Virus record (IMG/VR): IMGVR_UViG_3300044591_002232
Location: 124,001-188,000 of that record
Strand: one strand, 5' to 3'
Length of the DNA stretch: 64,000 bases
In this document: in pieces, positions 25,794 through 51,561 of the stretch
Layout: each line of letters starts with the position of its first letter
Position numbering within the stretch: the stretch's first letter is position 1
The notes under the pieces: model-generated
What the model saw: the letters and a program-made list of their open reading frames with translations, nothing else
Databases searched by the model: none
What the model was told of the DNA's origin: nothing
Position numbers and translations under genes: made by a program

Positions 25794-26627
25794 ATGGATT
25801 TCACTATACTCGCGCAACTGAACGAATCATATCGCCACGGTGTTTATGCCGAAGAAACCCTTTCTCAAGAAGAACTAGTTAGTATTGAAGAGTGGGTCGA
25901 GGCTCTTATCGAAGAAGGCTATGACCTTGATCAATATAGTGACGAAGAACTTTATGGGGCTTATTTGGAAACTCTTTCTGAGGCAAAAGCTGATGAAGGT
26001 CTAACTCCTCTTCAGAAAATTAGAAAAAGAAATAAAGAAGGAAATTTAGTAATGCCTGTTGGCGATCAAACTAGTGAACGTAGATCGTATCATAAAGCCG
26101 GAAGGGGAGAGAAAAAAGAAAGAGGTGATAAATATGATGTTGGATCTACTGTAGGAAAAGATAAATGGGCCAGAGAAGCCGAAGTTAAAAAGCGTTATGG
26201 TTCTCATTATGATGAAACTGGAAGACGCGAAGGAAATGTAAGAGCAATTAAAAGTCAAAAAAAAGTTGGTGGCCCTAAAGGCCTTCCAGAAGAACTAGAC
26301 CTCTACGACATGGTTTCTGAATATCTTGTATCAGAAGGTTTCTGTGATTCTTATGAGGGCGCAGACGTTATTATGGCCAACATGTCAGAAGAGTGGCGGG
26401 AGAGCATCGTCAACACTCTTATTGAAGAGGGTTTTGTGAGTCCTTATAAGGCACCTCATGCTCACGGTAGATCCATGGATAATACTGGTAGACTATCTCC
26501 AGCAATGAAGGCCATGAAAAAGAGTGATGATCTTCAAAAGACTGAGCCTGGTTCAGAAAGACAAAAAATGCAAACCAGAAGGTCTGGTCAGCTCAACAGA
26601 ATGTTCTCGGCTGCAAGAAACGCCTGA
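25794..26627 (+). CDS. Late modular acidic/basic hypothetical protein
   Basis: EWVEALIEEGYDL and YLVSEGFCDSYE.A.VIMANMSEEWR modules; late promoter 25762. Confidence 0.7.
   Translation: MDFTILAQLNESYRHGVYAEETLSQEELVSIEEWVEALIEEGYDLDQYSDEELYGAYLETLSEAKADEGLTPLQKIRKRNKEGNLVMPVGDQTSERRSYHKAGRGEKKERGDKYDVGSTVGKDKWAREAEVKKRYGSHYDETGRREGNVRAIKSQKKVGGPKGLPEELDLYDMVSEYLVSEGFCDSYEGADVIMANMSEEWRESIVNTLIEEGFVSPYKAPHAHGRSMDNTGRLSPAMKAMKKSDDLQKTEPGSERQKMQTRRSGQLNRMFSAARNA
25967..26121 (+). repeat. 155-bp exact direct repeat, copy 1 (copy 2 at 29292-29446)
   Basis: Compared base by base; offset 3325 nt. Confidence 0.9.
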
Positions 26628-26631
26628 GTTA

Positions 26632-26877
26632 ATGGACTCGGTAAACTTCCTTATAGAGAATAACTACACAGATTCTGAAAAGGCGGCCTCTAAAATCCTA
26701 GAGGCCGCTTCTGATGAGTTTAAAGAATATATTCTTCAAGAAGTAAATAAACAATGGCTTAAAAAACAGGCAATTAATTTAACAAAAAAGGCCGCTAAAA
26801 CTGCTGCAAAATCAAAACCAGCGAAAGCAATAACAACTTTTGTAAAAAACACGGCCCTAGGTGCCCTGATCTCCTGA
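26632..26877 (+). CDS. Small modular acidic/basic protein (81 aa)
   Basis: MDSVNFLIENNYTDSEKAASKILEAASDEFKEYILQE plus K/A-rich tail. Confidence 0.6.
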   Translation: MDSVNFLIENNYTDSEKAASKILEAASDEFKEYILQEVNKQWLKKQAINLTKKAAKTAAKSKPAKAITTFVKNTALGALIS

Positions 26878-26953
26878 CTACTTGACAAATTCCCCATTAA
26901 CGTGCTAAAATCGGTTCTCTCCCACAAGAGAGCCGATTTTTTATTGTAATATT

Positions 26954-27241
26954 ATGAGTAACGAACACTTTTGGAAATATAATGAGGACAGGATTCTCAA
27001 ACAACTAGAAGAATATCTGAAAACTACATATAATCAACATTATGTTGATAGGTCTTCTGGGAGTAATGATCAAACAATAGATAAAATTAAGTATTCCCGA
27101 AGAGAAGGATTCTGCGCTGGAAATGTCACAAAATATATCGACAGATATGATTGCAAGGGAACTCCCCGAGCAGATCTCTTTAAGGTTCTACATTATACTA
27201 TGCTTCTTATTAATCATCTTGACCTAATTGAAAATAAATGA
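26954..27241 (+). CDS. Conserved cyanophage hypothetical (DUF3310-like)
   Basis: YNEDRIL...Y...HY, GFCAGNVTKYIDRY, DLFKVLHY. Confidence 0.7.
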   Translation: MSNEHFWKYNEDRILKQLEEYLKTTYNQHYVDRSSGSNDQTIDKIKYSRREGFCAGNVTKYIDRYDCKGTPRADLFKVLHYTMLLINHLDLIENK

Positions 27242-27903
27242 AACTTTCACCAGAAACTCTTGCTCTTCTAAAGAACTTCGCATCAATCAGTCAATCAATT
27301 CATATTAAACCCGGAAATTCTCTAAAAACAGTCAAAGGATCCAGGGCCGTTTATGGAGAAGCAACCATCCCAGAGAAATTTGAAAAGGAATTTGGAATTT
27401 ACAATCTCAATCAATTTCTCAATAGCTTTAATCTCTTAGATGATCCAGATCTAGATTTTTCTAGTGATAAGTACGTCGTTCTAAGTGAAGGAAAAAGAAA
27501 GATCAAGTATTTTTATGCAAGTCTTTCAACAATTCCAAATCTTCCAGACAAGCAAATCAAAATGCCTTCTCAGGACATTTGCTTCATTATGGAACAGGCC
27601 TTTCTTGATAAGATTGTAAAGGCCAGGCAGATTTATTCCTTGGATGACCTCTCGGTGGTTGGTGATGGAGAGACTATTCAATTGATCGTTCACGATAAAA
27701 AGAACGACACCTCAAATGAATATTCTATTGAAGTTGGATCAACCACCGAAAAGTTCTGTATGCACATCAAAAATGAGAATCTGCAGTTCTATCCAGGGTC
27801 TTATGATGTGGTGATTTCAAGGAAGGGTATTTCCAAGTTTACAAACAAAAAAATTCCATTGACATATTGGGTTGCAATGGAGCCTGATTCCACCTTTGAA
27901 TAA
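27238..27903 (+). CDS. gp45: Sliding clamp
   Basis: MKLSPETLALLKNFASISQSI, FGIYNLNQFL, YWVAMEPDS. Confidence 0.93.
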   Translation: MKLSPETLALLKNFASISQSIHIKPGNSLKTVKGSRAVYGEATIPEKFEKEFGIYNLNQFLNSFNLLDDPDLDFSSDKYVVLSEGKRKIKYFYASLSTIPNLPDKQIKMPSQDICFIMEQAFLDKIVKARQIYSLDDLSVVGDGETIQLIVHDKKNDTSNEYSIEVGSTTEKFCMHIKNENLQFYPGSYDVVISRKGISKFTNKKIPLTYWVAMEPDSTFE

Positions 27904-27909
27904 TTTATT

Positions 27910-28842: not shown

Positions 28843-29207
28843 AAGACTGGCTGAATTCAATTTATTTTAGCAAGAAAAACTTATTAGAAGAGGTTGATAA
28901 TCCCAATCAATATCCAGCCTTTATTGTCAATCGAATGTTATCAGGAAATATCGATACGGCTCTTTTTGCAAGTGAGCTGAATGAAAGGTTCACGATGGAC
29001 AAGGAAATGCAATACAAGTTTCTTCTTTATGCAGTTCCTAAAAGAAAAAGATTTTCTAATTATTTAAAAAAGAATTCATTAGAAGATCTAGAATTAGTTA
29101 AGTCTTATTATGGTTATAATAATGAAAAGGCAATCGAGGCATTGAAACTATTATCCAAAGAACAGATTGATTATATCAAAGAGAAGTTAAATGTTGGTGG
29201 GATCTAA
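28833..29207 (+). CDS. gp62: Clamp loader small subunit
   Basis: MELKDWLNSI, YPAFIVNR, LVKSYYGYNNEKAIEAL. Confidence 0.9.
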   Translation: MELKDWLNSIYFSKKNLLEEVDNPNQYPAFIVNRMLSGNIDTALFASELNERFTMDKEMQYKFLLYAVPKRKRFSNYLKKNSLEDLELVKSYYGYNNEKAIEALKLLSKEQIDYIKEKLNVGGI

Positions 29208-29232
29208 ATAGTTAATAATTTACTATTTAAAA

Positions 29233-29643
29233 ATGGACCCCAAAATTTTAATGCAGATAAACGAAATTTATCGCAACGAGGTTTATGCCGAGGAAACTCT
29301 TTCTGAGGCAAAAGCTGATGAAGGTCTAACTCCTCTTCAGAAAATTAGAAAAAGAAATAAAGAAGGAAATTTAGTAATGCCTGTTGGCGATCAAACTAGT
29401 GAACGTAGATCGTATCATAAAGCCGGAAGGGGAGAGAAAAAAGAAAAGGGTGCTAAAAGTGCTTTTGGTACTATGAGACATGTTGGTGGCCCCTATAATG
29501 AAGAATTAGACCTCTACGACATCGTTTCCGAGTATCTTGTCTCTGAAGGGTTCTGTGATTCTTATGAGGACGCTGGTGTAATTATGGCAAACATGTCGGA
29601 AGAATGGCGCGATGGTATTTTAGATGAGGTGACTGGTAGTTGA
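29233..29643 (+). CDS. Late modular acidic/basic protein, paralog of 25794-26627
   Basis: Shares 155 identical nt and the SEGFCDSYE..VIMANMSEEWR module. Confidence 0.7.
   Translation: MDPKILMQINEIYRNEVYAEETLSEAKADEGLTPLQKIRKRNKEGNLVMPVGDQTSERRSYHKAGRGEKKEKGAKSAFGTMRHVGGPYNEELDLYDIVSEYLVSEGFCDSYEDAGVIMANMSEEWRDGILDEVTGS
29292..29446 (+). repeat. 155-bp exact direct repeat, copy 2
   Basis: Identical to 25967-26121. Confidence 0.9.
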
Positions 29644-29844
29644 CAAATAAGATTTCGTAAAGGTCAATCCGGCAGATCTCCAAAAAATCTGGAATGGTGA
29701 TGACTCCACAAAAAAAAGCGGCCCTTAAGCCGGGAAGAATGGATGTAGATTCGACAACTGATCCGGAACGGAGAGCAAGACAGGCGAGAGTTGCATTACG
29801 TTAAAACTAAATAATTGATAATTACTTTATTTTGAGGAATTTTT

Positions 29845-30288
29845 ATGGCTAATTATGAAATGGATGGACAATATGTGCGTTGGAGTCCAGACCTTATGGT
29901 AGAAGTAGAACTGGAAACTCCAGATTCTTTTCTACTTGCAAAAGAAACACTAACCCGAATTGGGGTGGCTTCTAGGTATAAGAAAGAGCTTTTTCAGACG
30001 GCACATATTTTATATAAATCTGCGAAATATTATATTATTCATTATAAATTTGGGTTTGCACTGGATAATCGTCAGGCCACAATCACTGTAAACGATTTGG
30101 AAAGGCTTCACACGATTTCGGCGCTTTTGGAGCAGTGGGGTCTTGTAAAAATCAAAAACCCTGCACAGGTGGAGGATCGAGCGCCATTAAACCAGATAAA
30201 AATTATTTCTTTTGCGGATAAAACGAACTGGAATTTGGTTGAAAAATATTCTTTGGGTAAAAAAAAGGAGACTCCTCAAGTACGGTAA
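29845..30288 (+). CDS. regA: Translational repressor RegA
   Basis: PDSFLLAKETLTRIGVAS, HILYK..KYYIIH.K. Confidence 0.9.
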   Translation: MANYEMDGQYVRWSPDLMVEVELETPDSFLLAKETLTRIGVASRYKKELFQTAHILYKSAKYYIIHYKFGFALDNRQATITVNDLERLHTISALLEQWGLVKIKNPAQVEDRAPLNQIKIISFADKTNWNLVEKYSLGKKKETPQVR

Positions 30289-30450
30289 TCACCACTTATT
30301 ACATAATAAACTGGATCCCTCTTGTAGTAATTTAATACATTAGATATAAATACTTCTGGCTACCCACCCCATAACGTCGGCGCAACAAGACCTCTTGACA
30401 AAAGCCCAAGAGGTGCTATAATACGAGGGTCCACAGAGGCCCTCTTTTTC

Positions 30451-33200: not shown

Positions 33201-33205
33201 AACTT

Positions 33206-36178: not shown

Positions 36179-36183
36179 TTATT

Positions 36184-36812: not shown

Positions 36813-36843
36813 GTTACTAAATAACTAAAACAATTGTAGTAAA

Positions 36844-37458
36844 ATGCAAGAACTAGTAGACTTTCTTATCGAAGAAAGATATTGTAACAGTGAATTAGAG
36901 GCCGTAAAGATTCTAGAATCAGTAAGTGATAGTTTTTATGAGTATCTTATTGAGGCTCAAATATCTGCTATTAATGCAACTGCCAAGGCAAGAAAAGAGA
37001 TGGATGCTGAAATGCGAAGAGCAGCATCCCCCACCTTTAATCCAAAAAAAGTAAGTCATCTTAGAAAAAAAATAACCGGACTAAAGGGACCTGTTGCTAC
37101 AGAATTGGCTCAAAGAAGTGGAAGTAAAAGTTCCCAAAAAACTCCAACTGGTCCAAGAGGAGAAAGAGCCCAAACTAGTGATATTGCAACAACCAGAACC
37201 GCCGCATCTAGAACTGATCGTCCCATGACAGGATCAAGACTTAATGATCCTCGTTTTGCTGCAGCAGCAGAGAGAGAAGTATCTAGGCAAACAAATACTT
37301 CACCAGAAGTAGATAGAGCCGGATTTGCATCTAGACAATCTACCGGTGTGAGAAGAACAGGTAAATATACAAGCATGTCAGCAAGTGGAGCAACCTCCGC
37401 ACTACCGAATCTTGGTCAATCTAGAACTGGAGCCAGATTCCCTAGGCAACGTGGATAA
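36844..37458 (+). CDS. Late protein: acidic N-module plus R/S/A-rich basic region
   Basis: MQELVDFLIEERYCNSELEAVKILESVSDSFYEYLIE; late promoter 36817. Confidence 0.65.
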   Translation: MQELVDFLIEERYCNSELEAVKILESVSDSFYEYLIEAQISAINATAKARKEMDAEMRRAASPTFNPKKVSHLRKKITGLKGPVATELAQRSGSKSSQKTPTGPRGERAQTSDIATTRTAASRTDRPMTGSRLNDPRFAAAAEREVSRQTNTSPEVDRAGFASRQSTGVRRTGKYTSMSASGATSALPNLGQSRTGARFPRQRG

Positions 37459-37460: not shown

Positions 37461-38669
37461 ATGAAAAAGTACTTTGAATTTCTATATGAGGCCAGAGGTT
37501 CCCAAGCCTCAGAAAAGGCCCTAAATCTAGGTCTTGCATCTGACGGTCACGGATATTGGGTAGATAGATCCGGTCGTAAGGTTGCAAAAACCGAAGGTGG
37601 TCAATTGGTTTTTATAAAAGGAAAATCCCCAGCAGCCGAAAAGGCCGCCCCACCTTCTGCATCAATGAAACCTTCCGCAAGAACCGCCACACCTCTTGCA
37701 AAAAGGCAACCACCCGAAAGACAAGTCTCGCCACCAAAAGAACAAGAAAAGGCCCCAGAACCAGAAACTCAAGAAGTTCTCACAGTTGTTTTTGGGAGAT
37801 TTAATCCACCAACAATTGGTCATGAAAAGCTATTAAAGAAGGCTAAAGAAATAGCCCAATCGGGTGATCTAAAGATCTATCCTTCAAGGTCATATGGAGA
37901 TCCTTCCAACCCTTTAAGTCCTTCTGATAAGATTTATTATATGAGAAAGGCCTTTCCAAAATTTGCTGATAATATCATCAATGATGATGATATGAAAACA
38001 ATTTTTGATGTTCTTAAATTGGCCGATGAAGAAGGCTATGAAACTGTTAATCTTGTAACCGGTGCAAAGAGAAGATCGGAATTTGATCGTCTAGCAAATC
38101 AATACAATGGAGAAATTTATAATCTTGCAGATATTAATGTAATTGCCCTTCCTAGTGAGGATCCAGATCTAGAAAATAGCCCTAATCCATCTTCTTCTGC
38201 AAGACTCAGAAAGGCAGCCCTAGAAGATGATTTCTTTGCATTCCAAAGAGGTCTCCCAAAAACATTAAATGCAAAGCAACAGCAGGCCCTATTTTTTGCT
38301 GTTCAGAGGGCTCTTTCAGGTGAGAAAAAGGAATCCTGGAAAATAGATCCATCCTCAAATTATGAGATTCTTAAAGAAGAATATTATAAAGAAAATATTT
38401 ATAAAACCGGGGACCTTATTGAAAATCTCAATACTGGGCTAACTGGTAAAATTATAAGAAGAGGTCCTAACTACGTCATTTGTGTAAATGAGGATTTGAA
38501 TATTATGTTTAAGTCTTGGATCGAGGATATTAAAGAATGGACCGATGTTTCTGGTGTTCCTGCCGAACAGAGAGAGGTGGGTACTGACGCTTACAGGGAA
38601 TATGCTATGAAGATGACTGGAATGAAAGTAATTCAAAATTTCATTAAGAAGAGAAAAAGTTCTAAATAG
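37461..38669 (+). CDS. Cytidyltransferase-like (HIGH-family) protein of cyanomyoviruses
   Basis: FGRFNPPTIGHEKLL, NPLSPSDKI, SSSARLRKAA. Confidence 0.85.
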   Translation: MKKYFEFLYEARGSQASEKALNLGLASDGHGYWVDRSGRKVAKTEGGQLVFIKGKSPAAEKAAPPSASMKPSARTATPLAKRQPPERQVSPPKEQEKAPEPETQEVLTVVFGRFNPPTIGHEKLLKKAKEIAQSGDLKIYPSRSYGDPSNPLSPSDKIYYMRKAFPKFADNIINDDDMKTIFDVLKLADEEGYETVNLVTGAKRRSEFDRLANQYNGEIYNLADINVIALPSEDPDLENSPNPSSSARLRKAALEDDFFAFQRGLPKTLNAKQQQALFFAVQRALSGEKKESWKIDPSSNYEILKEEYYKENIYKTGDLIENLNTGLTGKIIRRGPNYVICVNEDLNIMFKSWIEDIKEWTDVSGVPAEQREVGTDAYREYAMKMTGMKVIQNFIKKRKSSK

Positions 38670-38692: not shown

Positions 38693-40012
38693 ATGTCTGA
38701 AAGAATTGTAGGTGCTCTTGCCAAGATGAAAGAGCTTTATGTTGAGCAGGTTCGTGACAATGATCCTCAACAAAGAGTTCTAGAAGAAAAAATGCAACAG
38801 GTTACTGAATATAAAAAAAATAAACTAGATCCAGTTGGGCAAGAAGATAGTGACATTGATAATGATGGTGATACTGATAAAACTGATAGATATCTTCTAA
38901 AACGAAGAGCCGTAAGAACTAGGCAAATAAATAAGAATATTAAACCACCAGTAGCTGAAAATATTTTTTATAGCTGGAGAGACACTGTAGAAGAATCTCT
39001 TCTTCATGAAATCAATGACGTTTCGGACAATAAGATTGTAAAAGAAAAGAAAGTTGATAATTATTCAGGTAAAACCCCTGTGGTTACCATAAATCCTGAA
39101 ATGAAAACTGAATCAGTTCTGATTGATTCTGAAGAACTCAATGAAGATTTTATTGAAGAATCCATTGACATTGCAACCGAATATCTTTGTGAAGAAGGTC
39201 TTTCTGTTGAGGATGTTGAGGATCTTATTGATGAACTTGGGGCTGAAGAATTTAGTGAGTGGGTTATGCAACTTGGTTATGAGACACTTCTTGATGAAGA
39301 AAGAACAGCCAAAAGGGCAAAACCAAAAAAAACAGTAGAGCAAATTAAGGCCGAAATCGATTCTAGAGAAAAGGCAGCAGCCGCTAAAAAAGCCGTCTCT
39401 AAAAAACCAACAACTGTTTCTTCAAAAGCAGCAACACCAGCGCCCAAATCTTCTCGCCCCCCTGGTCAAGAACGAATTATTAAAGGTGCTAAAAGTATTG
39501 CACAATCGGCAGGTTCTCCTGAAAATATTAGGACTACAGTGAGAGGTGCTCTTGATACTGTTTCCAGAGGAGCCCTTTCTGCTGCCAAAGGTCATCAAAG
39601 AGCAATGGAAATTAAAAAGAAAGGTGGTTCTCTTGCCCAACAACTTGGTGGTGGAGCTGGGGCTGCTCTCGGGAGTTTCTTTAAAAAAGGAACTGCTCAA
39701 TTTAGAGAATGGGTAGACAGCCTTCTAGAAGAAGGTTATGATCTTTCCGAATACACCTGGGACGAACTGTATGAAGAGTATAAACTTCAAGAAAAAGCGG
39801 TTTCTGAACAACAACAAAAACTCTTTGGGTTGGCTCTTTCTGTAAAAAGGGGTGAAACCTCAAGAGATAAAGTGAGTCCAGAAGTTCTAAAAATTGTGAA
39901 TACCATGAGCGAGGCAGAAATTCGCAAATATGCCGCAACTCAACATGAGGATGTTCCCGAAAAGAAAGAGCTTGCAGAGAAAGTTATTCAATTTGTTAGA
40001 CAAAACAGCTAA
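38693..40012 (+). CDS. Late modular acidic/basic protein
   Basis: DSDIDNDGDTDKTD motif, EWVDSLLEEGYDL module, K/A-rich centre. Confidence 0.7.
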   Translation: MSERIVGALAKMKELYVEQVRDNDPQQRVLEEKMQQVTEYKKNKLDPVGQEDSDIDNDGDTDKTDRYLLKRRAVRTRQINKNIKPPVAENIFYSWRDTVEESLLHEINDVSDNKIVKEKKVDNYSGKTPVVTINPEMKTESVLIDSEELNEDFIEESIDIATEYLCEEGLSVEDVEDLIDELGAEEFSEWVMQLGYETLLDEERTAKRAKPKKTVEQIKAEIDSREKAAAAKKAVSKKPTTVSSKAATPAPKSSRPPGQERIIKGAKSIAQSAGSPENIRTTVRGALDTVSRGALSAAKGHQRAMEIKKKGGSLAQQLGGGAGAALGSFFKKGTAQFREWVDSLLEEGYDLSEYTWDELYEEYKLQEKAVSEQQQKLFGLALSVKRGETSRDKVSPEVLKIVNTMSEAEIRKYAATQHEDVPEKKELAEKVIQFVRQNS

Positions 40013-41332: not shown

Positions 41333-41546
41333 CGAAATCATTCAGATGGTAAGAGAGGAAATGACAGTGGCAAATGCCCCTGGTCAGTCTGGTGGTTTCG
41401 GGGAAAATTCACCTAAAGAAGGACCGACTGCGGGATATTCACAGCCAATGTTTGGTCTAAGAAGAAATAAAAGTGGCAAATTAGACAAGAGAAATCCGTT
41501 TATTAAGAAGTATAAGATGCTTCTCCAGTCATTAGGACTTGCATAA
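41319..41546 (+). CDS. Small conserved hypothetical
   Basis: MKKIDEIIQMVREEMTVANAPG. Confidence 0.6.
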   Translation: MKKIDEIIQMVREEMTVANAPGQSGGFGENSPKEGPTAGYSQPMFGLRRNKSGKLDKRNPFIKKYKMLLQSLGLA

Positions 41547-42057: not shown

Positions 42058-42063
42058 TGTGAA

Positions 42064-43065: not shown

Positions 43066-44074
43066 GCCATTGCAACTTTCTAAACTCCATGAAATGGTCG
43101 CCTGCGCCTGTGAGGGCCTTTCTGGAGTTTCAGTATCTCAGGTAGAAATGGCATCTGGGATTCAATTTTATGATGGTATTTCAACCAATGAAATTCAAGA
43201 AATCTTGATCAAGGCCGCATCTGATCTTATTTCTCTAGATAATCCTAATTATCAATACGTGGCCGCAAGACTTCTTCTGTTTTCAATTCGGAAGAAGATC
43301 TATGGTGGTCGAATTGATCTACCTCATCTGAGTGAGCACATTAAAAAGTGTGTAGACCTTGGTGTTTATGATGCCTCCATTTATGAGAACTATTCTGAAG
43401 AAGAACTAGATCTGGTCAATTCTTTTATTGACCATGACCGGGATCTTTTGTTTACTTATGCTGGCCTTCGGCAGGTAGTTGATAAGTATCTTGTGCAAGA
43501 CCGAGTGGATAATGTTCTTTATGAGACTCCTCAGTTTATGTACTTGGTGATTGCACTTACTGGTTTTGCAAAGTATCCTAAAGACAAAAGGATGTCTTAT
43601 GTAAAGCGTTATTATGATGCAATTAGCAAGCATAAAATTAATATTCCTACACCAATTCTTGCAGGAGTCAGAACCAAACTGAGGCAATATAGTAGTTGTG
43701 TTCTTGTTGATGTAGGAGATAGTCTTTCTAGTATCGAGGCTAGTGACGCTGCGGTTTTTAGATATGTTGCACAGCGAGCCGGTCTAGGTATTAATGCTGG
43801 GCGTATTAGGGGGATAAACAGTAAAATTCGTGGCGGTGAAGTTGTCCACACTGGAGTTATTCCTTATCTGAAAAAGTTTGAGGCCACTGTAAAAAGTTGT
43901 ACGCAAAATGGAATTCGCGGGGGTTGTTTTGATTCTGATTCTGAAGTTTTATTAATTGATAGTGTAGAAATTGATGGTAAAATTTATACACTCGATGATG
44001 AAATTGATGGGGTTAAAGTGTCTGAAATTATAAATAGTCATAACGGAAATAAAACCGTTATGTTATTGGAGTAA
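43022..44074 (+). CDS. nrdA: NrdA fragment 1 (301-aa extein with ATP cone plus 49-aa split-intein N-half)
   Basis: VKKRNG ATP cone, PTPILAG, SSCVL, TQNGIRGG then CFDSDSEV. Confidence 0.93.
   Translation: MSEEIKVKKRNGTIEPLQLSKLHEMVACACEGLSGVSVSQVEMASGIQFYDGISTNEIQEILIKAASDLISLDNPNYQYVAARLLLFSIRKKIYGGRIDLPHLSEHIKKCVDLGVYDASIYENYSEEELDLVNSFIDHDRDLLFTYAGLRQVVDKYLVQDRVDNVLYETPQFMYLVIALTGFAKYPKDKRMSYVKRYYDAISKHKINIPTPILAGVRTKLRQYSSCVLVDVGDSLSSIEASDAAVFRYVAQRAGLGINAGRIRGINSKIRGGEVVHTGVIPYLKKFEATVKSCTQNGIRGGCFDSDSEVLLIDSVEIDGKIYTLDDEIDGVKVSEIINSHNGNKTVMLLE
43925..44071 (+). mobile_element. Split intein 1, N-half (49 aa, atypically short)
   Basis: Begins with Cys (CFDSDSEVLL) exactly where NrdA homology stops. 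Confidence 0.75.
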
Positions 44075-44077
44075 AAA

Positions 44078-45073
44078 ATGGAAGACTTAATTTGGAACGA
44101 AGAAACGATTAGAAAAAGTAGATCTCCTTTTAGTATCTACTTTTATCTTAAAAAAACCAATGGAAATCAAGAGGAAGCTCAGAAACTTTACAGGGAATTT
44201 TTGGATAAAAATGTACCATTTAAAGAAAAACATAATAGACCCAATGCAAAAGAGTATTGGATGACCCGAGGATTTAGCGAAGAAGAAGCCATAATAAAGG
44301 TTAGGGAATTTCAATCTAAGCCTTTAGATTTGGAAATTTATATTGAGAAGTACGGAGAGGAGGAGGGTCTAGCTAAGTTTAATAAAAGAAAAGAAAATCT
44401 TCAAAATAGATTTGATGTTGAGATTAAAAATGTTCAACAAAAATTAAATTGCAGTTATGATGAGGCATATGAATATTGTTGCCAAAGAAGGAGAAGTTGT
44501 TCTCCTAGAACAGTAGATTATTGGTTAAATAGGGGCCATTCATTGGAGGATGCAAAAAAATTAGTATCAAAATTTTCAAAAGAAAGTAGTCCAAGAAGCA
44601 TATATTATTGGATCAGAATTGGTTATACCGAAGAAGAAGCAAAATTAAAAGTTTCTGAATATCAAGATAACAATTCTATAAGTGCCATAATGAAACGATA
44701 TGGGTGCGATAAATTTGAGGCTCTTGATATACAAGAATCTATACTTGAAAAAACCAAAAAAACTAATATTCAAAATAAAAAGAGTGTCGAAATTGGTGAT
44801 GAATATGCTTTTTTCGTTTATAAAAAGGAGGTTCAACGCGAAACAAAAAAAACTCTAAGATTGTATAAAGATACTTTTGTCAAAACTGATAAAAGTCAAA
44901 CTCTAGATCATATGTATAGCGTTTTTTGGGGTTTTTATAATGATGTTCCTCCAAAAATAATTGGATCTATTTATAATCTTAGATATGTTTCTCAATCAGA
45001 AAACTCAAAAAAACAATCTAATTGCTCAATAACACTCGAAACCTTATTAGAAAAGTACGAAAATGGAAATTAA
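44078..45073 (+). CDS. Free-standing HNH-like homing endonuclease inside fractured nrdA
   Basis: YW..RG.S.EEA repeats; LDHMYS..GF.N.VPP.IIGS..NL...N..K...CSIT. Confidence 0.7.
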   Translation: MEDLIWNEETIRKSRSPFSIYFYLKKTNGNQEEAQKLYREFLDKNVPFKEKHNRPNAKEYWMTRGFSEEEAIIKVREFQSKPLDLEIYIEKYGEEEGLAKFNKRKENLQNRFDVEIKNVQQKLNCSYDEAYEYCCQRRRSCSPRTVDYWLNRGHSLEDAKKLVSKFSKESSPRSIYYWIRIGYTEEEAKLKVSEYQDNNSISAIMKRYGCDKFEALDIQESILEKTKKTNIQNKKSVEIGDEYAFFVYKKEVQRETKKTLRLYKDTFVKTDKSQTLDHMYSVFWGFYNDVPPKIIGSIYNLRYVSQSENSKKQSNCSITLETLLEKYENGN

Positions 45074-45464
45074 AATTAATCTGGCAAAGAAAAGAATTTC
45101 AGATGTCTCCGTTGGAGATAGAGTCTATTGTTATAACGAATTTGATGATAAATTTTGTGTTGGAAATGTAACAAATTTATTTACTCCAACAATAAAAAAA
45201 GAATATCAGGAAGAAATTCTTATTGGTGGGGAGGCTGTTTATACTTCTAGTATTCATCCTTTTTATGATGGTCTTAATAAGAAATGGGTGGACTCACGGG
45301 AAATCGACAACATTTTTGGATTAGGGGTTTATGGTGATTATATTGACATTTTAAATGATCATAATTATAAATCTAATTGTGATAAAACTTTTTATGATTT
45401 TACTGTTGATAAATATCACAACTATTTTGTCGGCAAAAATGGAAAATTTACTTTAACTCATAAT
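45063..45464 (+). mobile_element. Split intein 1, C-half (134 aa)
   Basis: ISDVSVGDRV, block B TSSIHPF, block F YDFTVDKYHNYF, block G THN followed by Ser. Confidence 0.8.
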
Positions 45465-47219
45465 TCATCCACAGTATTTTTTCCTGTGTGGCACCAAGAA
45501 ATCGAGGATATTATTGTATTAAAAAATAATAAAGGCTCAGAAGATAATCGTGTTCGCAACCTTGATTATGCCATTCAGCTGAGTAAAATTTTTTATGAGC
45601 GATTTATTCAGGATGGAGAAATTACTCTGTTTTCACCTCATAATGTTCCAGGTCTTTATGAAAAATTTGGTTTAGATGGATTTGATGAACTTTATGTAAA
45701 GTATGAAAATGATCCTTCTATTCCAAAGAAAAAAGTAAAGGCCCAAGAGCTTATTATTGATATCTTGAAAGAGCGTGCAGAGACTGGTCGGATTTATCTT
45801 ATGAATATCGATCATTGTAATTCACATGGTCCTTTTAAGGATCAGATTACAATGAGTAACCTTTGTGTTGCTGGTGATACTAAAATTGAAATTGAAATTT
45901 TTGTTAAAGATATTAATGATTACAGGTGGGCAACAATTGACATAAAAAATTTAAATGATTTTATTAACAATCCAGAGTATGGGAATCTGAGAGTTCTTTC
46001 TTACGACCTTAATACTAGAACGAATGTAACCCAATCTATTACTGCATTTGCCGAAACTTTACCAAAAGCCCAGGTAATGAAACTTAGGCTCAGTAATAAT
46101 GTCGAAATCGTTGTTACCCCAGATCATAAGGTTTATACCAAAAATCGAAGCTATGTTATGGCCAAGGATCTGACTGCTTATGATGAATTAGTTTCACCAA
46201 AATTGAATGAATCTCTAAAAGTTGTTTCAACCGAATATCTTGAGGAAGAAATTCCTGTTTATGATATTACTGTAGAAGGAACTCATAATTTCTTTGCAAA
46301 TGGAGTTCTTGTTTCCAATTGTATGGAAATCCTTCTAAAAACTACCCCGATTGAACATATTGATGATGTAGATGGATCTATTGCTCTTTGTATTCTTTCT
46401 TGTGTTAATGTAGGTACAATTAAGTCTGATAAAGAGCTTGAAGAATGTTGTGATCTTTCTGTTAGATTCTTAGATGAGCTAATTGACCATCAGGAATATC
46501 CTGTTAAGGCCGCCGAATTAACAACCAAGGCTAGTCGTTCTCTAGGTATTGGTTATATTGGTCTGGCTCATTATCTTGCTAAATTGGGATTTAAATATTC
46601 TGATCCTGGTGCATGGGGAGCTGTCCATAAACTAACTGAAAGTTTTCAGTATTATCTTCTAAAATCATCCAATAATCTAGCAAAAGAAAAGGGTGCATGT
46701 GACAACTTTAAACACACTAAGTATTCTGATGGAATTCTTCCAATTGATACTTATAAGAAAGAAGTTGATGAAATTTGTGATGTAGAATATACTCATGACT
46801 GGGAACAACTTCGTCAGGATATTTTAGAACATGGTCTTCGCCATACTACACTCTCCTCTCAACCCCCAACGGAGAGTTGCCTTTTTTGGGAACATAAGAT
46901 TAAAACTTCTACCGGGGAAATGGACTTCCATCAAATTGCCGAATATGGTGGACTTGATTGGAGAGGGATTGAGGAAAATGATGCAATCGGCTGGTATGAC
47001 CTGAACAAGACTATTACAGTTGAAACTCAAGATGGATACAAAGAAGTTGATAAACTTTATTTCAATGGAAATAAAGAAGTTGCGACTATTACCTTTGAAA
47101 ATGGTAAAGTGATTAAGTGTACACCCAATCATAAGTTTTTGGTTCGACTAGAAAATGGTTCCACTATCTGGAAGCGAGTTTATGAATTGAATGAAGATGA
47201 CGAAGTAGTTGAGATTTAA
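45063..47219 (+). CDS. nrdA: NrdA fragment 2 (IntC1 - extein - cis intein - extein - IntN2)
   Basis: LTHN|SSTVFFPVWHQEIEDI; ERAETGRIY; SNL|C...SN|CMEIL; RSLGIGYIGLA; QPPTES|CLF. Confidence 0.93.
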   Translation: MEIKINLAKKRISDVSVGDRVYCYNEFDDKFCVGNVTNLFTPTIKKEYQEEILIGGEAVYTSSIHPFYDGLNKKWVDSREIDNIFGLGVYGDYIDILNDHNYKSNCDKTFYDFTVDKYHNYFVGKNGKFTLTHNSSTVFFPVWHQEIEDIIVLKNNKGSEDNRVRNLDYAIQLSKIFYERFIQDGEITLFSPHNVPGLYEKFGLDGFDELYVKYENDPSIPKKKVKAQELIIDILKERAETGRIYLMNIDHCNSHGPFKDQITMSNLCVAGDTKIEIEIFVKDINDYRWATIDIKNLNDFINNPEYGNLRVLSYDLNTRTNVTQSITAFAETLPKAQVMKLRLSNNVEIVVTPDHKVYTKNRSYVMAKDLTAYDELVSPKLNESLKVVSTEYLEEEIPVYDITVEGTHNFFANGVLVSNCMEILLKTTPIEHIDDVDGSIALCILSCVNVGTIKSDKELEECCDLSVRFLDELIDHQEYPVKAAELTTKASRSLGIGYIGLAHYLAKLGFKYSDPGAWGAVHKLTESFQYYLLKSSNNLAKEKGACDNFKHTKYSDGILPIDTYKKEVDEICDVEYTHDWEQLRQDILEHGLRHTTLSSQPPTESCLFWEHKIKTSTGEMDFHQIAEYGGLDWRGIEENDAIGWYDLNKTITVETQDGYKEVDKLYFNGNKEVATITFENGKVIKCTPNHKFLVRLENGSTIWKRVYELNEDDEVVEI
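45864..46319 (+). mobile_element. Cis mini-intein (152 aa) at the NrdA active-site SNL|CxE
   Basis: CVAGDT, VTPDHKVY, YDITVEGTHNFFANGVLVSN followed by Cys. Confidence 0.9.
46878..47216 (+). mobile_element. Split intein 2, N-half (113 aa)
   Basis: CLFWEHKI, CTPNHKF, ELNEDDEV then stop. Confidence 0.88.
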
Positions 47220-47270
47220 TGCGTTGATGCCTTCACTTTACTAAATAATAATAGTTTAGTAAAGGCATCA

Positions 47271-48347
47271 ATGAAGACAAAACTAGTTACTTTAATGAAA
47301 ACCAGATTTAACATTTTAACCCCGCACGAACTCTTAACAGAATTGAAACAAATCGGAAAAATTGACTATAGGTCATTAAGAAAGCCATTTGAAGAAACCC
47401 CGCCAGAGAGATTTGATCTTGAGGTTATTAAAAAATATGTTAGTTATGTTTTTCTATACCCAAATAAAAGAAAACTTCAATATGAACCAGAATATTGGAT
47501 GTACAGAAGGAACCTTTCTTATAATGAAGCTGTTGAGCTTATTAAACAAAATAAAATAGATAATGGTCAAACAAAAGAGGCTTTTATAAAAAGATATGGA
47601 GAAGAAAAAGGATTAGAAATGTATGAAAAATTTAGATTAACCAGCGCATATCCGTCTTCCGATGAATGGTTCAAAGAAAAATATGGGGAAACATGGGAAG
47701 AAGAAAAAGCATATGCTATGAAAAGAAAATCTAAACGAACTGTAGAATATTGGACCCATCGTGGATATAGTTTAGAAGAAGCTAAAATTGAAGTTAGTAA
47801 ATATCAAAGATCAACCTCTGGTGTTCATAGAGAATATTATAGACAAAGAGGATATAGTGAAGATGAAATTGCTGTTATTTTTAATGAAATAGATAAGAAA
47901 AAACCCAATCATAAAAGAAACACCAATTATCTCCGTGAAAAATACCCCGATACTTGGCAAGAGATTTATCTTGAAGTATCTGAAAAATATAGAAAAAGAA
48001 TGGAGGAGTTAGGAGTATGGATTGAAAATGACATTGCTGACGACTTTAAAAAATATAAAACGCTTGTAATTAGATATACTAATCAGAGTTTATTATTTTA
48101 TGGAGAATTGATTGAGAATTTAGAATTGAGATCTAAAGACTTTCAATTAGATCACAAATATTCAATTAAAATGGGATTTATAAATAATATTCCAGCTGAA
48201 ATAATTGGATCAATAGTAAATTTAGAGATACTTCCAGCGAGTATTAATGGCTCAAAACAACATAAATGTTCTATTACTAAAACCCACCTTTTAACCGAGT
48301 ACAAAAAATTTAAGGAGACACATGAAAGTAAAAACGATTCAATTTGA
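47271..48347 (+). CDS. Second free-standing HNH-like homing endonuclease inside nrdA
   Basis: YW..RGYSLEEA repeats; LDHKYS..GF.NNIPAEIIGS..NL...N.SK..KCSIT; late promoter 47241. Confidence 0.72.
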   Translation: MKTKLVTLMKTRFNILTPHELLTELKQIGKIDYRSLRKPFEETPPERFDLEVIKKYVSYVFLYPNKRKLQYEPEYWMYRRNLSYNEAVELIKQNKIDNGQTKEAFIKRYGEEKGLEMYEKFRLTSAYPSSDEWFKEKYGETWEEEKAYAMKRKSKRTVEYWTHRGYSLEEAKIEVSKYQRSTSGVHREYYRQRGYSEDEIAVIFNEIDKKKPNHKRNTNYLREKYPDTWQEIYLEVSEKYRKRMEELGVWIENDIADDFKKYKTLVIRYTNQSLLFYGELIENLELRSKDFQLDHKYSIKMGFINNIPAEIIGSIVNLEILPASINGSKQHKCSITKTHLLTEYKKFKETHESKNDSI

Positions 48348-48426
48348 AGGAGAAATTCTTCCAACTTACGACATTGAAGTTCCAGAAGTTCATCATTACA
48401 ACTGTGAAGGGCTAGTATCTCACAAC
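48322..48426 (+). mobile_element. Split intein 2, C-half (35 aa)
   Basis: Blocks F and G ending SHN with +1 Ser. Confidence 0.88.
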
Positions 48427-48861: not shown

Positions 48862-48873
48862 TCTAGGAAATTT

Positions 48874-50022: not shown

Positions 50023-50036
50023 CTAAATATATTAGT

Positions 50037-50120
50037 CTGTTAGTACGACAATACTCCACAGACAGGATTAGGTGCTCATATGAGCACCTTTTTTTATAAA
50101 TATTAATGTCGTACTAACAG
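50037..50120 (+). promoter_or_regulatory. Nested inverted-repeat/terminator/late-promoter cassette
   Basis: ctgttagtacgaca (50037-50050) and tgtcgtactaacag (50107-50120) flank palindrome aggtgctcatatgagcacct and TATAAATA. Confidence 0.65.
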
Positions 50121-50127
50121 AATATAA

Positions 50128-50223
50128 ATGACTAAATTAAATCCGAGAATTTATACATATAAAATTACTTTATATCAGAGAAATAGAGGAATAGATAAAT
50201 CAAATCGAATAAGAATTAAATAA
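50128..50223 (+). pseudogene. Truncated GIY-YIG-type endonuclease N-terminus
   Basis: MTKLNPRIYTYKIT then unrelated sequence; same upstream cassette as the intact gene at 52963. Confidence 0.55.
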
Positions 50224-50283
50224 CCCCGGCCCCTTTAAGGGTCTTTTTACTAAATACTAAAAGAAAACCTATTTCTAAAAAAT

Positions 50284-51561
50284 ATGTCACTTTATAGTCT
50301 AACAGAAGCCTATTCGGAAATCTACGATCACCGAAAGGTCGAAGATCTGTTTGATAATCTTCGATTTGTTGATTACATGCAAGATGGAGATATTGAACAA
50401 GTAGTCGAAGAACTCGTTTGGGAATTCCGTGATTATGGTAATACCTTAGACGAATCATTTGAAATGCTCTCATTTGCCTCGACCGATGAGGTAATTTGTG
50501 AGTCTTACGATGAGCTTATTGAAGATATTCTCACCGAGGCAACTGTTACCAAAGGATCCCAGCGTTCTCAATATGCTGGCTCTGCTCAGGATAGAGTGAC
50601 TTCTGGTCGTGGTGATATTATGGCCCAACAATCTGCTGCTAAAAAACTAGCCAGAAAGTCTGGTAAGGCGGTTGCGGCTGGCCTGGATGCAGAATCAAAG
50701 CAAAGAATGTCAGCTCGCGCCGCACGAGTTGGTAATGCTATTTCTAAGGTTAAATCCAAACTCAGTGGTCCTATTTCTTCTGTAAAACAGTCTATCTCAG
50801 GTTCTGCTGGTGGTCTAGGCCGTGCCACTAAGGCTATGGGTGGTAAAGTAGTAGAAAAAGGTAAGGCCATGTTAAAATCGATTCTTCGTCGTGGTGGTAA
50901 GGCCATCTATGGTGCTGGAAAGGCAATTGAGGGTAGTGGTAGAGCGGCATCCGCTGCTCCAGCAACCACTAGAACCGCCAAGGTTGGTCGCACCACTGTT
51001 ACCACTACCACAGAGCCTGGTGGTAGTAAAAGGCAGGCTGTTGGTCGGGCTGTTCGTAAAGTAGGTGTTGCGCTTCAAAGAAAGGCGGGTAAGAAAGATG
51101 AGCCCAAAATGAGTCGGGCTGATTATGAGTCTCGTAAGTCCGAAAGAACTACATCTGCCAAGAAAGAAGTGGGTGATGCATTTGCAAAGCCAAAACCAAT
51201 GCTTGCTCTTCCAGCAAAAACCTCTGGCCAGCCTGCTGTCCAAAGAACAGTTTCGGCTCGTAAACAAGAGGCCGCCAAGAAAATTGCCAAGGCCGCAGAA
51301 GGTTCAACTGCTAGGGGAACTCGATTTTCTGGTCCAGGGGCTCGTCTTTCTAGCCAAAGAACCAAGACTGGTTATAAAGAGCGTCTTGCCAAGTTTGCAT
51401 CTCAACTATCCGAGCAAGATTATAACACTCTAGTTGATTATATTCTTGAGGACATGATTTCAGAAGGTTATGCTTCTGATGTACTAGAAGCTCTTGATCT
51501 ATTTGAATCATTGACCGAAGATAGTGTAATTGATATTGCACTTGATTATTTTAACGACTGA
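50284..51561 (+). CDS. Late protein: acidic termini with long K/A/R/G-rich basic core
   Basis: ORF track; C-terminal YILEDMISEGYA module; late promoter 50250. Confidence 0.7.
   Translation: MSLYSLTEAYSEIYDHRKVEDLFDNLRFVDYMQDGDIEQVVEELVWEFRDYGNTLDESFEMLSFASTDEVICESYDELIEDILTEATVTKGSQRSQYAGSAQDRVTSGRGDIMAQQSAAKKLARKSGKAVAAGLDAESKQRMSARAARVGNAISKVKSKLSGPISSVKQSISGSAGGLGRATKAMGGKVVEKGKAMLKSILRRGGKAIYGAGKAIEGSGRAASAAPATTRTAKVGRTTVTTTTEPGGSKRQAVGRAVRKVGVALQRKAGKKDEPKMSRADYESRKSERTTSAKKEVGDAFAKPKPMLALPAKTSGQPAVQRTVSARKQEAAKKIAKAAEGSTARGTRFSGPGARLSSQRTKTGYKERLAKFASQLSEQDYNTLVDYILEDMISEGYASDVLEALDLFESLTEDSVIDIALDYFND

What the first reader, a model, noticed from the sequence alone, without database searches (positions are those of the whole stretch)
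25794..51561. Dispersed family of late proteins made of acidic modules and basic payloads: candidate internal-head/ejected protein system
Seen: ORFs at 25794, 26632, 29233, 36844, 38693 and 50284 combine related ~35-aa acidic modules with K/R/A/S-rich low-complexity stretches. Modules include YLVSEGFCDSYE.A.VIMANMSEEWR, FLIEERYCNSELEAVKILESVSDSF, FLIENNYTDSEKAASKILEAASDEF, YILEDMISEGYASDVLEALDLF and EWVE/DALIEEGYDL. Five have a CTAAATA late promoter immediately upstream, yet they are inserted among replication genes. Established: T4 gp21 cleaves core and internal proteins after (I/L)xE. Inference: the acidic modules target the prohead core and are clipped, releasing variable basic peptides that condense DNA or enter the host.
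Basis: inference. Interest (0 to 1): 0.66.

Follow-up and report, generated by a model that had tools for sequence, protein, structure and literature searches.

The report
Acidic-module late virion protein family
Six scattered late genes of this lake-water T4-like cyanophage belong to a very large, unnamed family that joins a small acidic three-helix module to basic disordered stretches; relatives are found in purified virions, so these are probably packaged head proteins, but nothing yet shows the module is the address label.

Summary
All six ORFs exist and sit between replication genes. Five have CTAAATA 27-34 nt upstream of the ATG; the sixth follows in the same unit. They share a real ~40-aa acidic module. 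A profile of the six finds two more late-promoter copies in the genome. AlphaFold folds the module as three helices (pLDDT 90.8). A 60-sequence profile hits 3,609 cluster representatives. There is no Pfam family, PDB relative or functional name.

New points:
- Most relatives also carry an N-terminal L-x-E-A-Y-x-x-V-Y signature.
- 95% of modules end in (I/L/V)-x-E, the T4 gp21 cleavage motif, next to net-basic sequence.
- Family genes lie beside genes that start with a near-copy of the T4 capsid targeting sequence (MKTYKEFITE; MKKYFEFLYE on the NMNAT/cytidylyltransferase-like gene at 37461).
- In Synechococcus phage S-SCSM1, a family member (ORF89), two relatives of ORF 38693 (ORF92, ORF93) and the NMNAT are labelled virion proteins from mass spectrometry.

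Verdict: these are probably packaged, gp21-processed internal proteins. Packaging is supported by homology. Cleavage, and the module acting as the targeting signal, remain inference. The module proteins themselves lack the T4-type targeting sequence. I rate this a new variant of a known kind, interest about 0.6.

The parts
25762..25768 (+). CTAAATA late-promoter-type motif, 25 nt between its end and the ATG at 25794
25794..26627 (+). Family ORF, 277 aa, pI 5.3. It has a variant N-terminal signature, module 2, a basic linker, module 1 and a basic tail.
   Evidence: (phrog_3708 E 2e-11)
25890..25964 (+). Module 2 (EWVEALIEEGYDL...), residues 33-57 of ORF 25794
   Evidence: 60% identity to residues 339-363 of ORF 38693
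26298..26417 (+). Module 1 (acidic three-helix module), residues 169-208 of ORF 25794
   Evidence: AF2 pLDDT 90.8
26632..26877 (+). Family ORF, 81 aa, pI 9.4. Module 1 sits at the very N-terminus (26632-26745), followed by L-Q-E and a basic K/A tail. Same transcription unit as 25794.
29204..29210 (+). CTAAATA motif upstream of ORF 29233
29233..29643 (+). Family ORF, 136 aa. Paralogue of 25794 that lacks module 2; module 1 at 29509-29628.
36817..36823 (+). CTAAATA motif upstream of ORF 36844
36844..37458 (+). Family ORF, 204 aa, pI 10.3. Module 1 at the N-terminus (36844-36963), followed by L-I-E-A and a basic R/S/T/A tail. The next gene starts 3 nt downstream.
37461..38669 (+). Neighbour, not a family member. 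NMNAT/cytidylyltransferase-like enzyme whose first 10 residues (37461-37490, MKKYFEFLYE, then A) resemble the T4 capsid targeting sequence MKTYQEFIAE. A basic P/A linker follows.
   Evidence: Homologues were detected in virions of S-SCSM1, S-CREM2 and S-SM1.
38662..38668 (+). CTAAATA motif upstream of ORF 38693
38693..40012 (+). Family ORF, 439 aa, pI 5.2. Mosaic of a DxDxDG-type motif block (38780-38938), a divergent module 1 (39161-39280), a basic A/K/S block, module 2 (39707-39781) and DUF3008 (39797-39967).
   Evidence: (PF11450, 39.4 bits against cut-off 24). S-SCSM1 ORF92 (E 6e-13) and ORF93 (E 5e-10) are relatives.
50250..50256 (+). CTAAATA motif upstream of ORF 50284
50284..51561 (+). 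Family ORF, 425 aa, pI 9.3. Canonical N-terminal signature (MSLYSLTEAYSEIY) within a conserved acidic N-domain (50284-50544) that ends in L-T-E-A. Then a variable basic middle and module 1 at the C-terminus (51421-51558).
   Evidence: (97 full-length homologues)
11078..11728 (+). gp21-type prohead protease, the presumed processing enzyme
   Evidence: phrog_207, E 8e-63
11806..12972 (+). gp22 scaffolding protein, used as the positive control for (L/I)xE density (19 sites against 7.9 expected)
13027..14436 (+). gp23 major capsid protein. The likely maturation site is after L-L-E at residue 58.
   Evidence: placed by analogy with T4 (inference)

Best explanation
The six ORFs belong to a very large, so far unnamed family of late proteins of T4-like (mainly cyano-) myoviruses. 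This phage has at least eight members.

Each protein is a mosaic of three kinds of part:
- one or more acidic three-helix modules of about 40 aa;
- in most members, a conserved N-terminal helix (M, a few residues, then L-x-E-A-Y-x-x-V/I-Y);
- basic, largely disordered low-complexity stretches.

The most likely reading is that they are made late, incorporated into the prohead interior with the scaffolding core, and cut by the gp21-type protease at the (I/L)-x-E sites at module ends and at acid-to-basic boundaries. This would happen alongside a separate set of cargo proteins tagged with a T4-type capsid targeting sequence, whose genes lie next to theirs. After cutting, basic fragments would stay with the DNA and acidic pieces would leave.

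Shown: the family, the fold prediction, the promoter motif, the conserved cleavage-type motif, the gene linkage, and the virion-protein label on homologues in one isolate.

Inferred: the location inside the head, the cleavage itself, and the role of the basic fragments.
For: Family and module:
- The seed HMM finds two non-seed copies in the genome.
- The module is multi-copy in S-CRM01 (4), B3 (5), S-SRM01 (4), DSL-LC02 (2) and S-SCSM2R (3), and occurs in P-SSM2.
- IMG/VR holds at least 228 relatives.
- A 60-sequence profile gives 3,609 representatives at E<=1e-3 and 2,675 at E<=1e-10.
- AF2 predicts three helices for the module, pLDDT 90.8.
- ORF 50284 has 97 full-length homologues with conserved ends and a variable basic middle.

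T4-like context:
- 14 of the 22 longest contigs carry the gp21-type protease PF03420; all 22 are fragments of large genomes.

Late timing:
- CTAAATA precedes all 7 transcription units, as it does the structural genes.

Cleavage logic:
- 251 of 264 modules end in [ILV]xE. In the 60-sequence alignment, position 41 is I in 56 of 60 and position 43 is E in 38 of 60.
- All eight copies in this genome have (L/I)xE near the module end or an acid-to-basic boundary.
- L83 and E85 of ORF 50284, at the boundary to the basic region, are at least 90% conserved in 76 homologues.
- (L/I)xE is enriched over shuffles in 50284 (10 against 3.3; 0 of 500 shuffles reach it), 38693 (13 against 6.7; 2 of 500) and 25794 (8 against 3.5; 4 of 500). 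gp22 behaves the same way (19 against 7.9; 0 of 500).
- T4 gp21 cuts after L/I-x-E (PMC9026906).

Linkage to packaged cargo:
- Only 4 of 1,777 ATG-ORF starts in the genome have a T4-type targeting sequence. Two of them directly abut family genes.
- Around module genes in IMG/VR such ORFs occur once per 14.9 kb, after dereplication to 31 locus groups. The two whole genomes give once per 62-71 kb.
- P-SSM2 has the same pair after nrdB: PSSM2_211 with the targeting sequence, PSSM2_212 a family-like protein.

Virion presence:
- S-SCSM1 ORF89 matches the N-terminal signature (E 7e-7) and the module profile (E 1.9e-7), and has 56% identity to the module of ORF 29233.
- ORF89, ORF92, ORF93 and NMNAT ORF91 are all labelled virion proteins in the record. 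The paper reports 45 proteins detected by MS in CsCl-purified particles.
- Basic K-rich hypothetical proteins and the cytidylyltransferase are also in the S-CREM2 virion proteome.
Against: - There are no proteomic data for this phage or its nearest isolates (B3, B23).
- The S-SCSM1 authors warn that abundant non-structural proteins may survive CsCl purification. I could not see peptide counts for ORF89.
- The four S-CRM01 module genes are only 'hypothetical protein' in a record that names some others 'virion structural protein'. The paper was not available, so this is weak evidence.
- S-CREM2, S-PM2, Syn9 and P-SSM4 show no module, so the family is not a universal head component.
- (L/I)xE is short and expected in acidic amphipathic helices. 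Whole-protein shuffles do not control for segmental composition.
- Being in a virion does not prove being inside the head.
- The shallow S-SCSM2R proteome (23 proteins, one of unknown function) gives no sign of its three module proteins.
Confidence: 0.55

Rival explanations
1. The proteins are packaged, but the module is not the address label. Targeting would be by the N-terminal L-x-E-A-Y-x-x-V-Y helix, or by co-assembly with the scaffold. The acidic modules would act as built-in charge-neutralising pro-domains or oligomerisation units for the basic stretches, and may or may not be removed.
For: - 102 of 150 top representatives carry the N-terminal signature. In the IMG/VR set its start sits at a nearly fixed distance from the start codon (alignment).
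- Modules occur at the N-terminus (14), inside the protein, or at the C-terminus (27), and in 1-3 copies. That is unlike a positional signal.
- The genome's actual T4-type targeting sequence is on other proteins.
- Sequence on both sides of modules is net basic: +2.7 and +3.0 per 40 aa.
Against: - Several members have no N-terminal signature and start directly with the module followed by IxE and a long basic tail: 36844, 26632, genome 65223, and S-SCSM2R ORFs 141 and 205. That layout mimics targeting sequence, cut site and basic internal protein.
- No binding or assembly data exist for either view.
Confidence: 0.25
2. The proteins are late but non-virion: for example chaperones or escorts for the basic targeting-sequence cargo encoded next door, or DNA-binding or condensing factors acting during late replication and packaging. 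Detection in virion preparations would then be carry-over.
For: - The genes sit among replication and nucleotide-metabolism genes.
- The S-SCSM1 authors raise carry-over as a possibility.
- The S-CRM01 module genes are not labelled as virion proteins.
- Acidic modules beside genes for very basic proteins would suit an escort role.
Against: - In S-SCSM1, a family member, the two 38693-like proteins and the NMNAT are all labelled virion proteins. They lie in a run of neighbouring genes (ORF89-93) that all carry the label.
- The conserved IxE at module ends has no obvious use outside a protease-processing setting.
Confidence: 0.15
3. There is no real family: the resemblance is a by-product of low-complexity, charge-biased sequence in fast-evolving filler ORFs.
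For: Much of each protein is low complexity. The Atlas's stored model of ORF 25794 has pLDDT 0.52, and AF2 gives ORF 50284 a mean of 59.
Against: - Position-specific conservation in the module: L14, E17, A26, I29, M33, S34, W37 and I41 are each at least 90% conserved in 60 non-redundant copies.
- The module fold is predicted with confidence.
- Thousands of hits at E<=1e-10.
- 97 full-length homologues of ORF 50284.
Confidence: 0.02

Closest known systems
T4 internal proteins IPI, IPII, IPIII (and Alt) with the N-terminal capsid targeting sequence MKTYQEFIAE
   Same: - Late genes whose products have basic mature parts.
- An (I/L)xE motif of the gp21 type at the join between an N-terminal acidic element and the basic part.
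- Genes dispersed, variable and dispensable-looking.
- In this genome and its relatives, true T4-type targeting sequences (MKTYKEFITE, MKKYFEFLYE, MKSFLQFLKE) sit on neighbouring genes.
   Different: - None of the six ORFs, and 0 of 150 family representatives, carry that targeting sequence.
- The acidic element is a folded 40-aa domain that can be internal, C-terminal or repeated.
- The proteins are much longer and more mosaic than the T4 internal proteins.
- No sequence similarity to the T4 internal proteins was found.
T4 prohead core proteins gp22, gp67, gp68
   Same: - Acidic helical segments rich in (L/I)xE, as in this phage's gp22.
- Late expression.
- Expected fragmentation by gp21, with loss of the acidic peptides.
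   Different: - No family match: the PHROG and Pfam scans give only unknown-function families.
- The weak BLAST match of 38693 to gp22 (19.6% identity, E 4e-4) looks compositional.
- The family has long basic stretches, which scaffolds lack.
- The genes lie outside the head gene block.
Paralogous, protease-processed inner-body and ejected head proteins of giant phages (phiKZ, 201phi2-1, SPN3US)
   Same: - Multi-member paralogous families of head-internal proteins.
- Processing after Glu at a very short motif by a gp21-related protease, with redundant sites in the propeptides (PMC9026906).
   Different: - Different phage lineage, and no sequence relationship was tested or seen.
- An inner body is not known in cyanomyoviruses.
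Virion-associated non-structural proteins of cyanomyoviruses (NMNAT/cytidylyltransferase; basic hypothetical proteins of S-CREM2, S-SCSM1, S-SM1)
   Same: - Direct homologues: S-SCSM1 ORF89 (family member), ORF92 and ORF93 (like 38693), ORF91 (like the gene at 37461).
- The S-CREM2 virion proteome contains basic K-rich late proteins.
   Different: Those papers list the proteins as unknowns or speculate on metabolism. They describe no module, no N-terminal signature, no targeting sequence and no processing logic.

Membership tests
T4-type internal proteins (capsid-targeting-sequence cargo) | N-terminal ~10-aa capsid targeting sequence resembling MKTYQEFIAE | tested here: not met
   None of the six ORFs has it, nor do any of 150 family representatives. 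It is present on neighbours: window 37461 and genome 91815(-).
T4-type internal proteins (capsid-targeting-sequence cargo) | Single gp21 cleavage after (L/I)-x-E, releasing a basic mature protein | not testable with these tools
   Only the motif could be tested. (L/I)xE lies at acid-to-basic boundaries in all eight genome copies and at 251 of 264 module ends. No peptide termini are available.
T4-type internal proteins (capsid-targeting-sequence cargo) | Present inside the mature head | tested here: inconclusive
   Homologues are labelled virion proteins in S-SCSM1 (MS in PMC9602691). Their location within the particle is unknown, and there are no data for this phage.
T4-type internal proteins (capsid-targeting-sequence cargo) | Late transcription | tested here: met
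   Met at the motif level only. CTAAATA lies upstream of all 7 units, at the same spacing as before the structural genes. No RNA data exist.
Head scaffolding / prohead core proteins (gp22, gp67, gp68) | Sequence membership in the scaffold families | tested here: not met
   PHROG and Pfam scans of the six ORFs give no head family. The phage's own gp22 matches phrog_237 at E 6e-101.
PHROG 3708 (unknown function) | Profile match | tested here: met
   ORF 25794 E 2e-11, 29233 E 4.7e-7, 38693 E 2.3e-5. The profile spans both module 2 and module 1.
Pfam DUF3008 (PF11450) | Profile match above the gathering score | tested here: met
   ORF 38693 residues 369-425, 39.4 bits against cut-off 24. Applies to this ORF only.
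New family defined here (acidic three-helix module with basic linkers) | Match to the module profile (alignment A6), with (I/L/V)xE at the module end | tested here: met
   All six ORFs and two further genome ORFs match. The end motif is present in seven of the eight copies and displaced by a few residues in 25794.
New family defined here (acidic three-helix module with basic linkers) | N-terminal L-x-E-A-Y-x-x-V/I-Y signature | tested here: inconclusive
   Canonical in 50284 and genome 92806(-). Variant in 25794, 29233 and 38693. Absent from 26632, 36844 and genome 65223, which start with the module.

The most novel reading that the evidence does not exclude
T4-like cyanomyoviruses have a second way of loading the prohead, independent of the capsid targeting sequence. 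A folded acidic three-helix pro-domain, found in at least 3,600 sequence clusters and with no Pfam family, would neutralise and deliver long basic disordered cargo. The prohead protease would cut it off at its conserved I-x-E end. The capsid would be left with a variable, lineage-specific charge of basic polypeptides beside the enzymes tagged with the targeting sequence (NMNAT, GNAT).
Probability: 0.25. Interest if true: 0.78.

Novelty: new variant of a known kind. Interest (0 to 1): 0.62.

Why it matters
Internal and ejected head proteins are the least understood part of T4-type virions outside T4 itself. For cyanophages none has been defined. Papers only list "virion-associated" unknowns and a puzzling NMNAT/cytidylyltransferase.

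This work gives those lists a structure:
- a near-T4 capsid targeting sequence on the NMNAT-like enzyme, on a GNAT acetyltransferase and on arrays of very basic proteins;
- a separate, very large module family linked to them, with a testable processing rule (a cut after the I-x-E that ends each module).

If confirmed, it would explain how these abundant aquatic phages pack non-structural enzymes and charge-balancing polypeptides. It would also name a large unannotated domain family and offer packaging tags for engineering cyanophages.

Tried and rejected
- **Fold and sequence searches of the module:** Foldseek against PDB gave nothing (best E 1.9). Profile and sequence searches of PDB gave nothing for the module or for the DUF3008 part.
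- **Weak Pfam hits:** LisH and BRF1 hits were below cut-off and were dismissed.
- **ESM Atlas:** only unnamed viral clusters.
- **N-terminal signature profile:** it found no further carriers in this genome and none in S-PM2, Syn9, P-SSM2 or P-SSM4.
- **Module searches:** blank in S-CREM2, S-PM2, Syn9 and P-SSM4. The S-CREM2 proteome therefore bears on the family only by analogy.
- **Papers not held:** the S-CRM01 paper (Dreher 2011) and the S-PM2 proteome paper.
- **Supplements:** no S-SCSM2R supplement is held. The S-SCSM1 supplement has no peptide table.
- **Gene context of two distant representatives:** uninformative.
- **gp22 match:** the BLAST match between gp22 and ORF 38693 (E 4e-4) was set aside as compositional.
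- **Not run:** Complex prediction, because I do not claim a specific binding pair and a negative result would say nothing. Read laying, because no RNA run holds the stretch.
- **First IMG/VR scan:** The scan was repeated with the four closest copies, so the 80 loci over-represent one subfamily. The linkage statistic was therefore dereplicated.

Full report
**1. Where the window comes from**

The window is bases 124001-188000 of a 249,820-bp virus record. The window's G+C content is mostly 0.30-0.40. Near-identical sequence is held by 20 runs from 20 studies, 19 of them labelled lake-water metagenomes and one simply metagenome. None is an RNA run. The nearest isolates are Synechococcus phages B3 and B23, and they match over only about 4% of a 15-kb query at the DNA level.

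The window carries T4-type genes:
- head genes: gp21 at 11078, gp22 at 11806, gp23 at 13027;
- replication genes: gp46, gp45, gp44, gp62, regA, gp43, uvsX, gp41, nrdA, nrdB.

**2. The observation**

All six ORFs are real and lie between those replication genes.

CTAAATA sits 27-34 nt before the ATG of five of them. The sixth, 26632, starts 5 nt after the stop of 25794. The same motif, at the same spacing, precedes the structural genes, so reading it as the late promoter is reasonable. That function is taken from T4 and cyanophage knowledge, not shown here.

The quoted modules fall into two classes:
- Module 1, an acidic unit of about 40 aa, is present in all six ORFs. The copy in 38693 is divergent.
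- Module 2, EWVEALIEEGYDL, is shared only by 25794 and 38693.

A profile of the six module 1 copies finds two further ORFs in the same genome that were not used to build it: 92192-92806 on the minus strand and 65223-65552 (E 2e-7 and 6e-7). Both have CTAAATA upstream. The phage therefore has at least eight members in seven late units.

**3. The family**

Module 1 is predicted with high confidence (pLDDT 90.8) as a three-helix mini-domain. Eight of its positions are at least 90% conserved in 60 non-redundant copies. It has no structural or sequence relative in PDB and no Pfam family. The matching PHROGs have unknown function.

It is common:
- several copies per genome in S-CRM01, B3, S-SRM01, DSL-LC02 and S-SCSM2R, and it also occurs in P-SSM2;
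- at least 228 relatives in IMG/VR;
- 3,609 representatives at E<=1e-3 in the 1.84-billion-protein library, 2,675 of them at E<=1e-10.

The 22 longest IMG/VR contigs that carry it are all fragments of large genomes, and 14 of them contain a gp21-type protease. Every case I could place is therefore a T4-like myovirus.

ORF 50284 has 97 full-length homologues. They share a strongly conserved acidic N-domain, a variable basic middle and a conserved C-terminal module. AF2 gives moderate confidence for the two ends and mostly low to moderate confidence for the middle.

**4.

(a) A second signature. Most relatives start with M, a few residues, then L-x-E-A-Y-x-x-V/I-Y. The start of the motif sits at a nearly fixed distance from the start codon. 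It is present in 102 of the top 150 representatives. In this genome it is canonical in 50284 and in the 92806 gene. It is a variant in 25794, 29233 and 38693, and absent from the three members that begin with the module itself.

(b) A cleavage-type motif at the module end. The module ends in (I/L/V)-x-E in 251 of 264 instances, and the 40 residues on either side are net basic. In the eight copies of this genome an (L/I)-x-E lies near the module end or at the acid-to-basic boundary. Examples are L-S-E-A in 25794 and 29233, L-I-E-A in 36844, L-T-E-A in 50284 and L-D-E-E in 38693. In 50284 the boundary L83 and E85 are at least 90% conserved in 76 homologues. T4 gp21 cuts after L/I-x-E (PMC9026906). 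The density of this motif exceeds whole-protein shuffles in 50284, 38693 and 25794, as it does in gp22. The caveat is that acidic helices favour the motif, and the shuffles do not preserve segmental composition.

(c) Linkage to genuine T4-type cargo. T4 internal proteins are highly basic and are loaded through the 10-aa sequence MKTYQEFIAE, which is then removed (PMC8442874). Of 1,777 ATG-ORF starts in this genome, four resemble it:
- MKTYKEFITE on a 126-aa, pI 10.2 GNAT acetyltransferase (Pfam Acetyltransf_7, 28.0 bits against cut-off 27). Its gene directly follows the family gene at 92806.
- MKKYFEFLYE on the NMNAT/cytidylyltransferase-like gene at window 37461. This gene is flanked by family ORFs 36844 and 38693.
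- Two others, at genome 203322 and window 61059.

Around module genes in IMG/VR there are 42 such ORFs, almost all with pI 9-11.5 and often in tandem arrays. After dereplication to 31 locus groups the density is one per 14.9 kb. The two whole genomes give one per 62-71 kb. P-SSM2 shows the same pairing after nrdB: PSSM2_211 starts MKSLSQFIIE and continues as 573 aa of K-rich sequence, and PSSM2_212 is a family-like protein.

**5. Are they in virions?**

There are no data for this phage. The S-SCSM1 paper reports 45 phage proteins detected by mass spectrometry in CsCl-purified particles, 13 of them of unknown function, and names the NMNAT (ORF91) among those detected (PMC9602691). The GenBank record marks such genes as "virion protein". 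Among the genes so marked:
- ORF89 has the N-terminal signature (E 7e-7), a module (E 1.9e-7; 56% identity to the module of 29233), basic linkers and a late-type promoter.
- ORF92 resembles 38693 (E 6e-13).
- ORF93 matches the DUF3008 part of 38693 (E 5e-10).
- ORF91 is 45% identical to the gene at 37461 and starts MKSFLQFLKE.

Further support comes from other proteomes. The cytidylyltransferase family was also detected in S-SM1 virions (PMC3037559) and in S-CREM2 (PMC10665884). In S-CREM2 it starts MKNFSSFLTE, and a basic K-rich virion protein starts MQTFSMFFSE.

Evidence pointing the other way is weak. The S-CRM01 module genes are plain "hypothetical protein", and I could not read that paper. 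The S-SCSM2R proteome is shallow. The S-SCSM1 authors note possible carry-over of abundant proteins.

**6. Interpretation**

The family is best read as late, packaged and probably head-internal proteins that are processed by gp21. They are encoded beside a T4-type cargo system that uses the capsid targeting sequence.

- For it: members such as 36844, 26632 and S-SCSM2R ORFs 141 and 205 have the layout N-terminal module, I-x-E, long basic tail. This parallels the T4 layout of targeting sequence, cut site and basic internal protein.
- Against it: the module's position and copy number vary, and it occurs as stand-alone 51-52-aa proteins (PSSM2_140, S-SCSM2R ORF130). A separate conserved N-terminal helix exists. 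Module proteins never carry the T4-type sequence.

An equally good reading is that the module is a charge-neutralising pro-domain.

**7. Novelty**

The principle is known from T4 and the giant phages: prohead-loaded, protease-trimmed internal proteins. Three things appear undescribed in the papers I could read:
- the module family and its N-terminal signature;
- the conserved I-x-E end of the module;
- the near-T4 targeting sequence on cyanophage NMNAT, GNAT and basic proteins. This would explain the repeated and so far unexplained detection of NMNAT-like enzymes in cyanophage virions.

I rate this a new variant of a known kind.

Noticed in passing
window 37461-38669: The NMNAT/cytidylyltransferase-like late gene starts MKKYFEFLYE then A. 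This is 6 of 10 identical, plus one conservative change, to the T4 capsid targeting sequence. The same kind of N-terminus is conserved on homologues in S-SCSM1, S-SCSM2R, S-CREM2 and IMG/VR genomes. Several of those homologues were detected in virions. This offers a mechanism for a repeatedly reported but unexplained observation.
   Followed up: yes
genome 91815-92195 (-), = L003:316-696 (outside the window): A 126-aa, pI 10.2 protein starts MKTYKEFITE, 8 of 10 identical to the T4 targeting sequence, and has a GNAT acetyltransferase domain. It lies directly downstream of a family gene. It is a candidate packaged or ejected acetyltransferase.
   Followed up: partly
window 41283-41546: A small ORF whose middle (TVANAPGQSGGFG...GPTAGY) copies the N-terminal arm of mature gp23 (residues 55-94, 40% identity). 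It is preceded by an acidic stretch ending in E. Similar proteins, S-SCSM1 ORF97 and the N-terminal part of S-CREM2 ORF160, are virion-detected. It may be an inner-capsid anchor that mimics the gp23 N-arm.
   Followed up: partly
window 61059-61430: A 123-aa ORF starts MLYKQFLVES, which resembles the targeting sequence. It has GATAAATAG upstream and an HExxH (HEMVH) metallopeptidase-like motif. There was no Pfam hit.
   Followed up: no
L118 (P-SSM2 169737-172905): Directly after nrdB, as with ORF 50284 in the window, P-SSM2 has two relevant genes. PSSM2_211 starts MKSLSQFIIE and continues as 573 aa of K-rich basic sequence. PSSM2_212 has two weak module matches and basic stretches.
   Followed up: partly
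window 43022-48347: nrdA is split into pieces, with intein/HINT domains in the 45063-47219 ORF. ORFs 44078-45073 and 47271-48347 are paralogues (32% identity). They are probably mobile-element or homing-endonuclease-type insertions.
   Followed up: no
window 6001-10000: This stretch has much higher G+C (0.50-0.54) than the rest of the window (mostly about 0.30-0.40). It contains tandem paralogous ORFs 7866-8654 and 8651-9445 (50% identity).
   Followed up: no
window 4311-4460: A 49-aa acidic ORF (MEELINAIIED...) lies right after the likely portal gene and has a late promoter. By position and N-terminus it resembles T4 prohead core protein gp67. The comparison with gp67 is from memory.
   Followed up: no
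genome 65549-65917 (outside the window): The ORF downstream of the module gene at 65223 contains an internal KKTYKQFLEA, a targeting-sequence-like string that is not at the annotated N-terminus.
   Followed up: no
window 29807-29813: regA (29845-30288), a translational repressor, also has CTAAATA 31 nt upstream, as do several small ORFs (40051, 40411, 47271, 52140).
   Followed up: no
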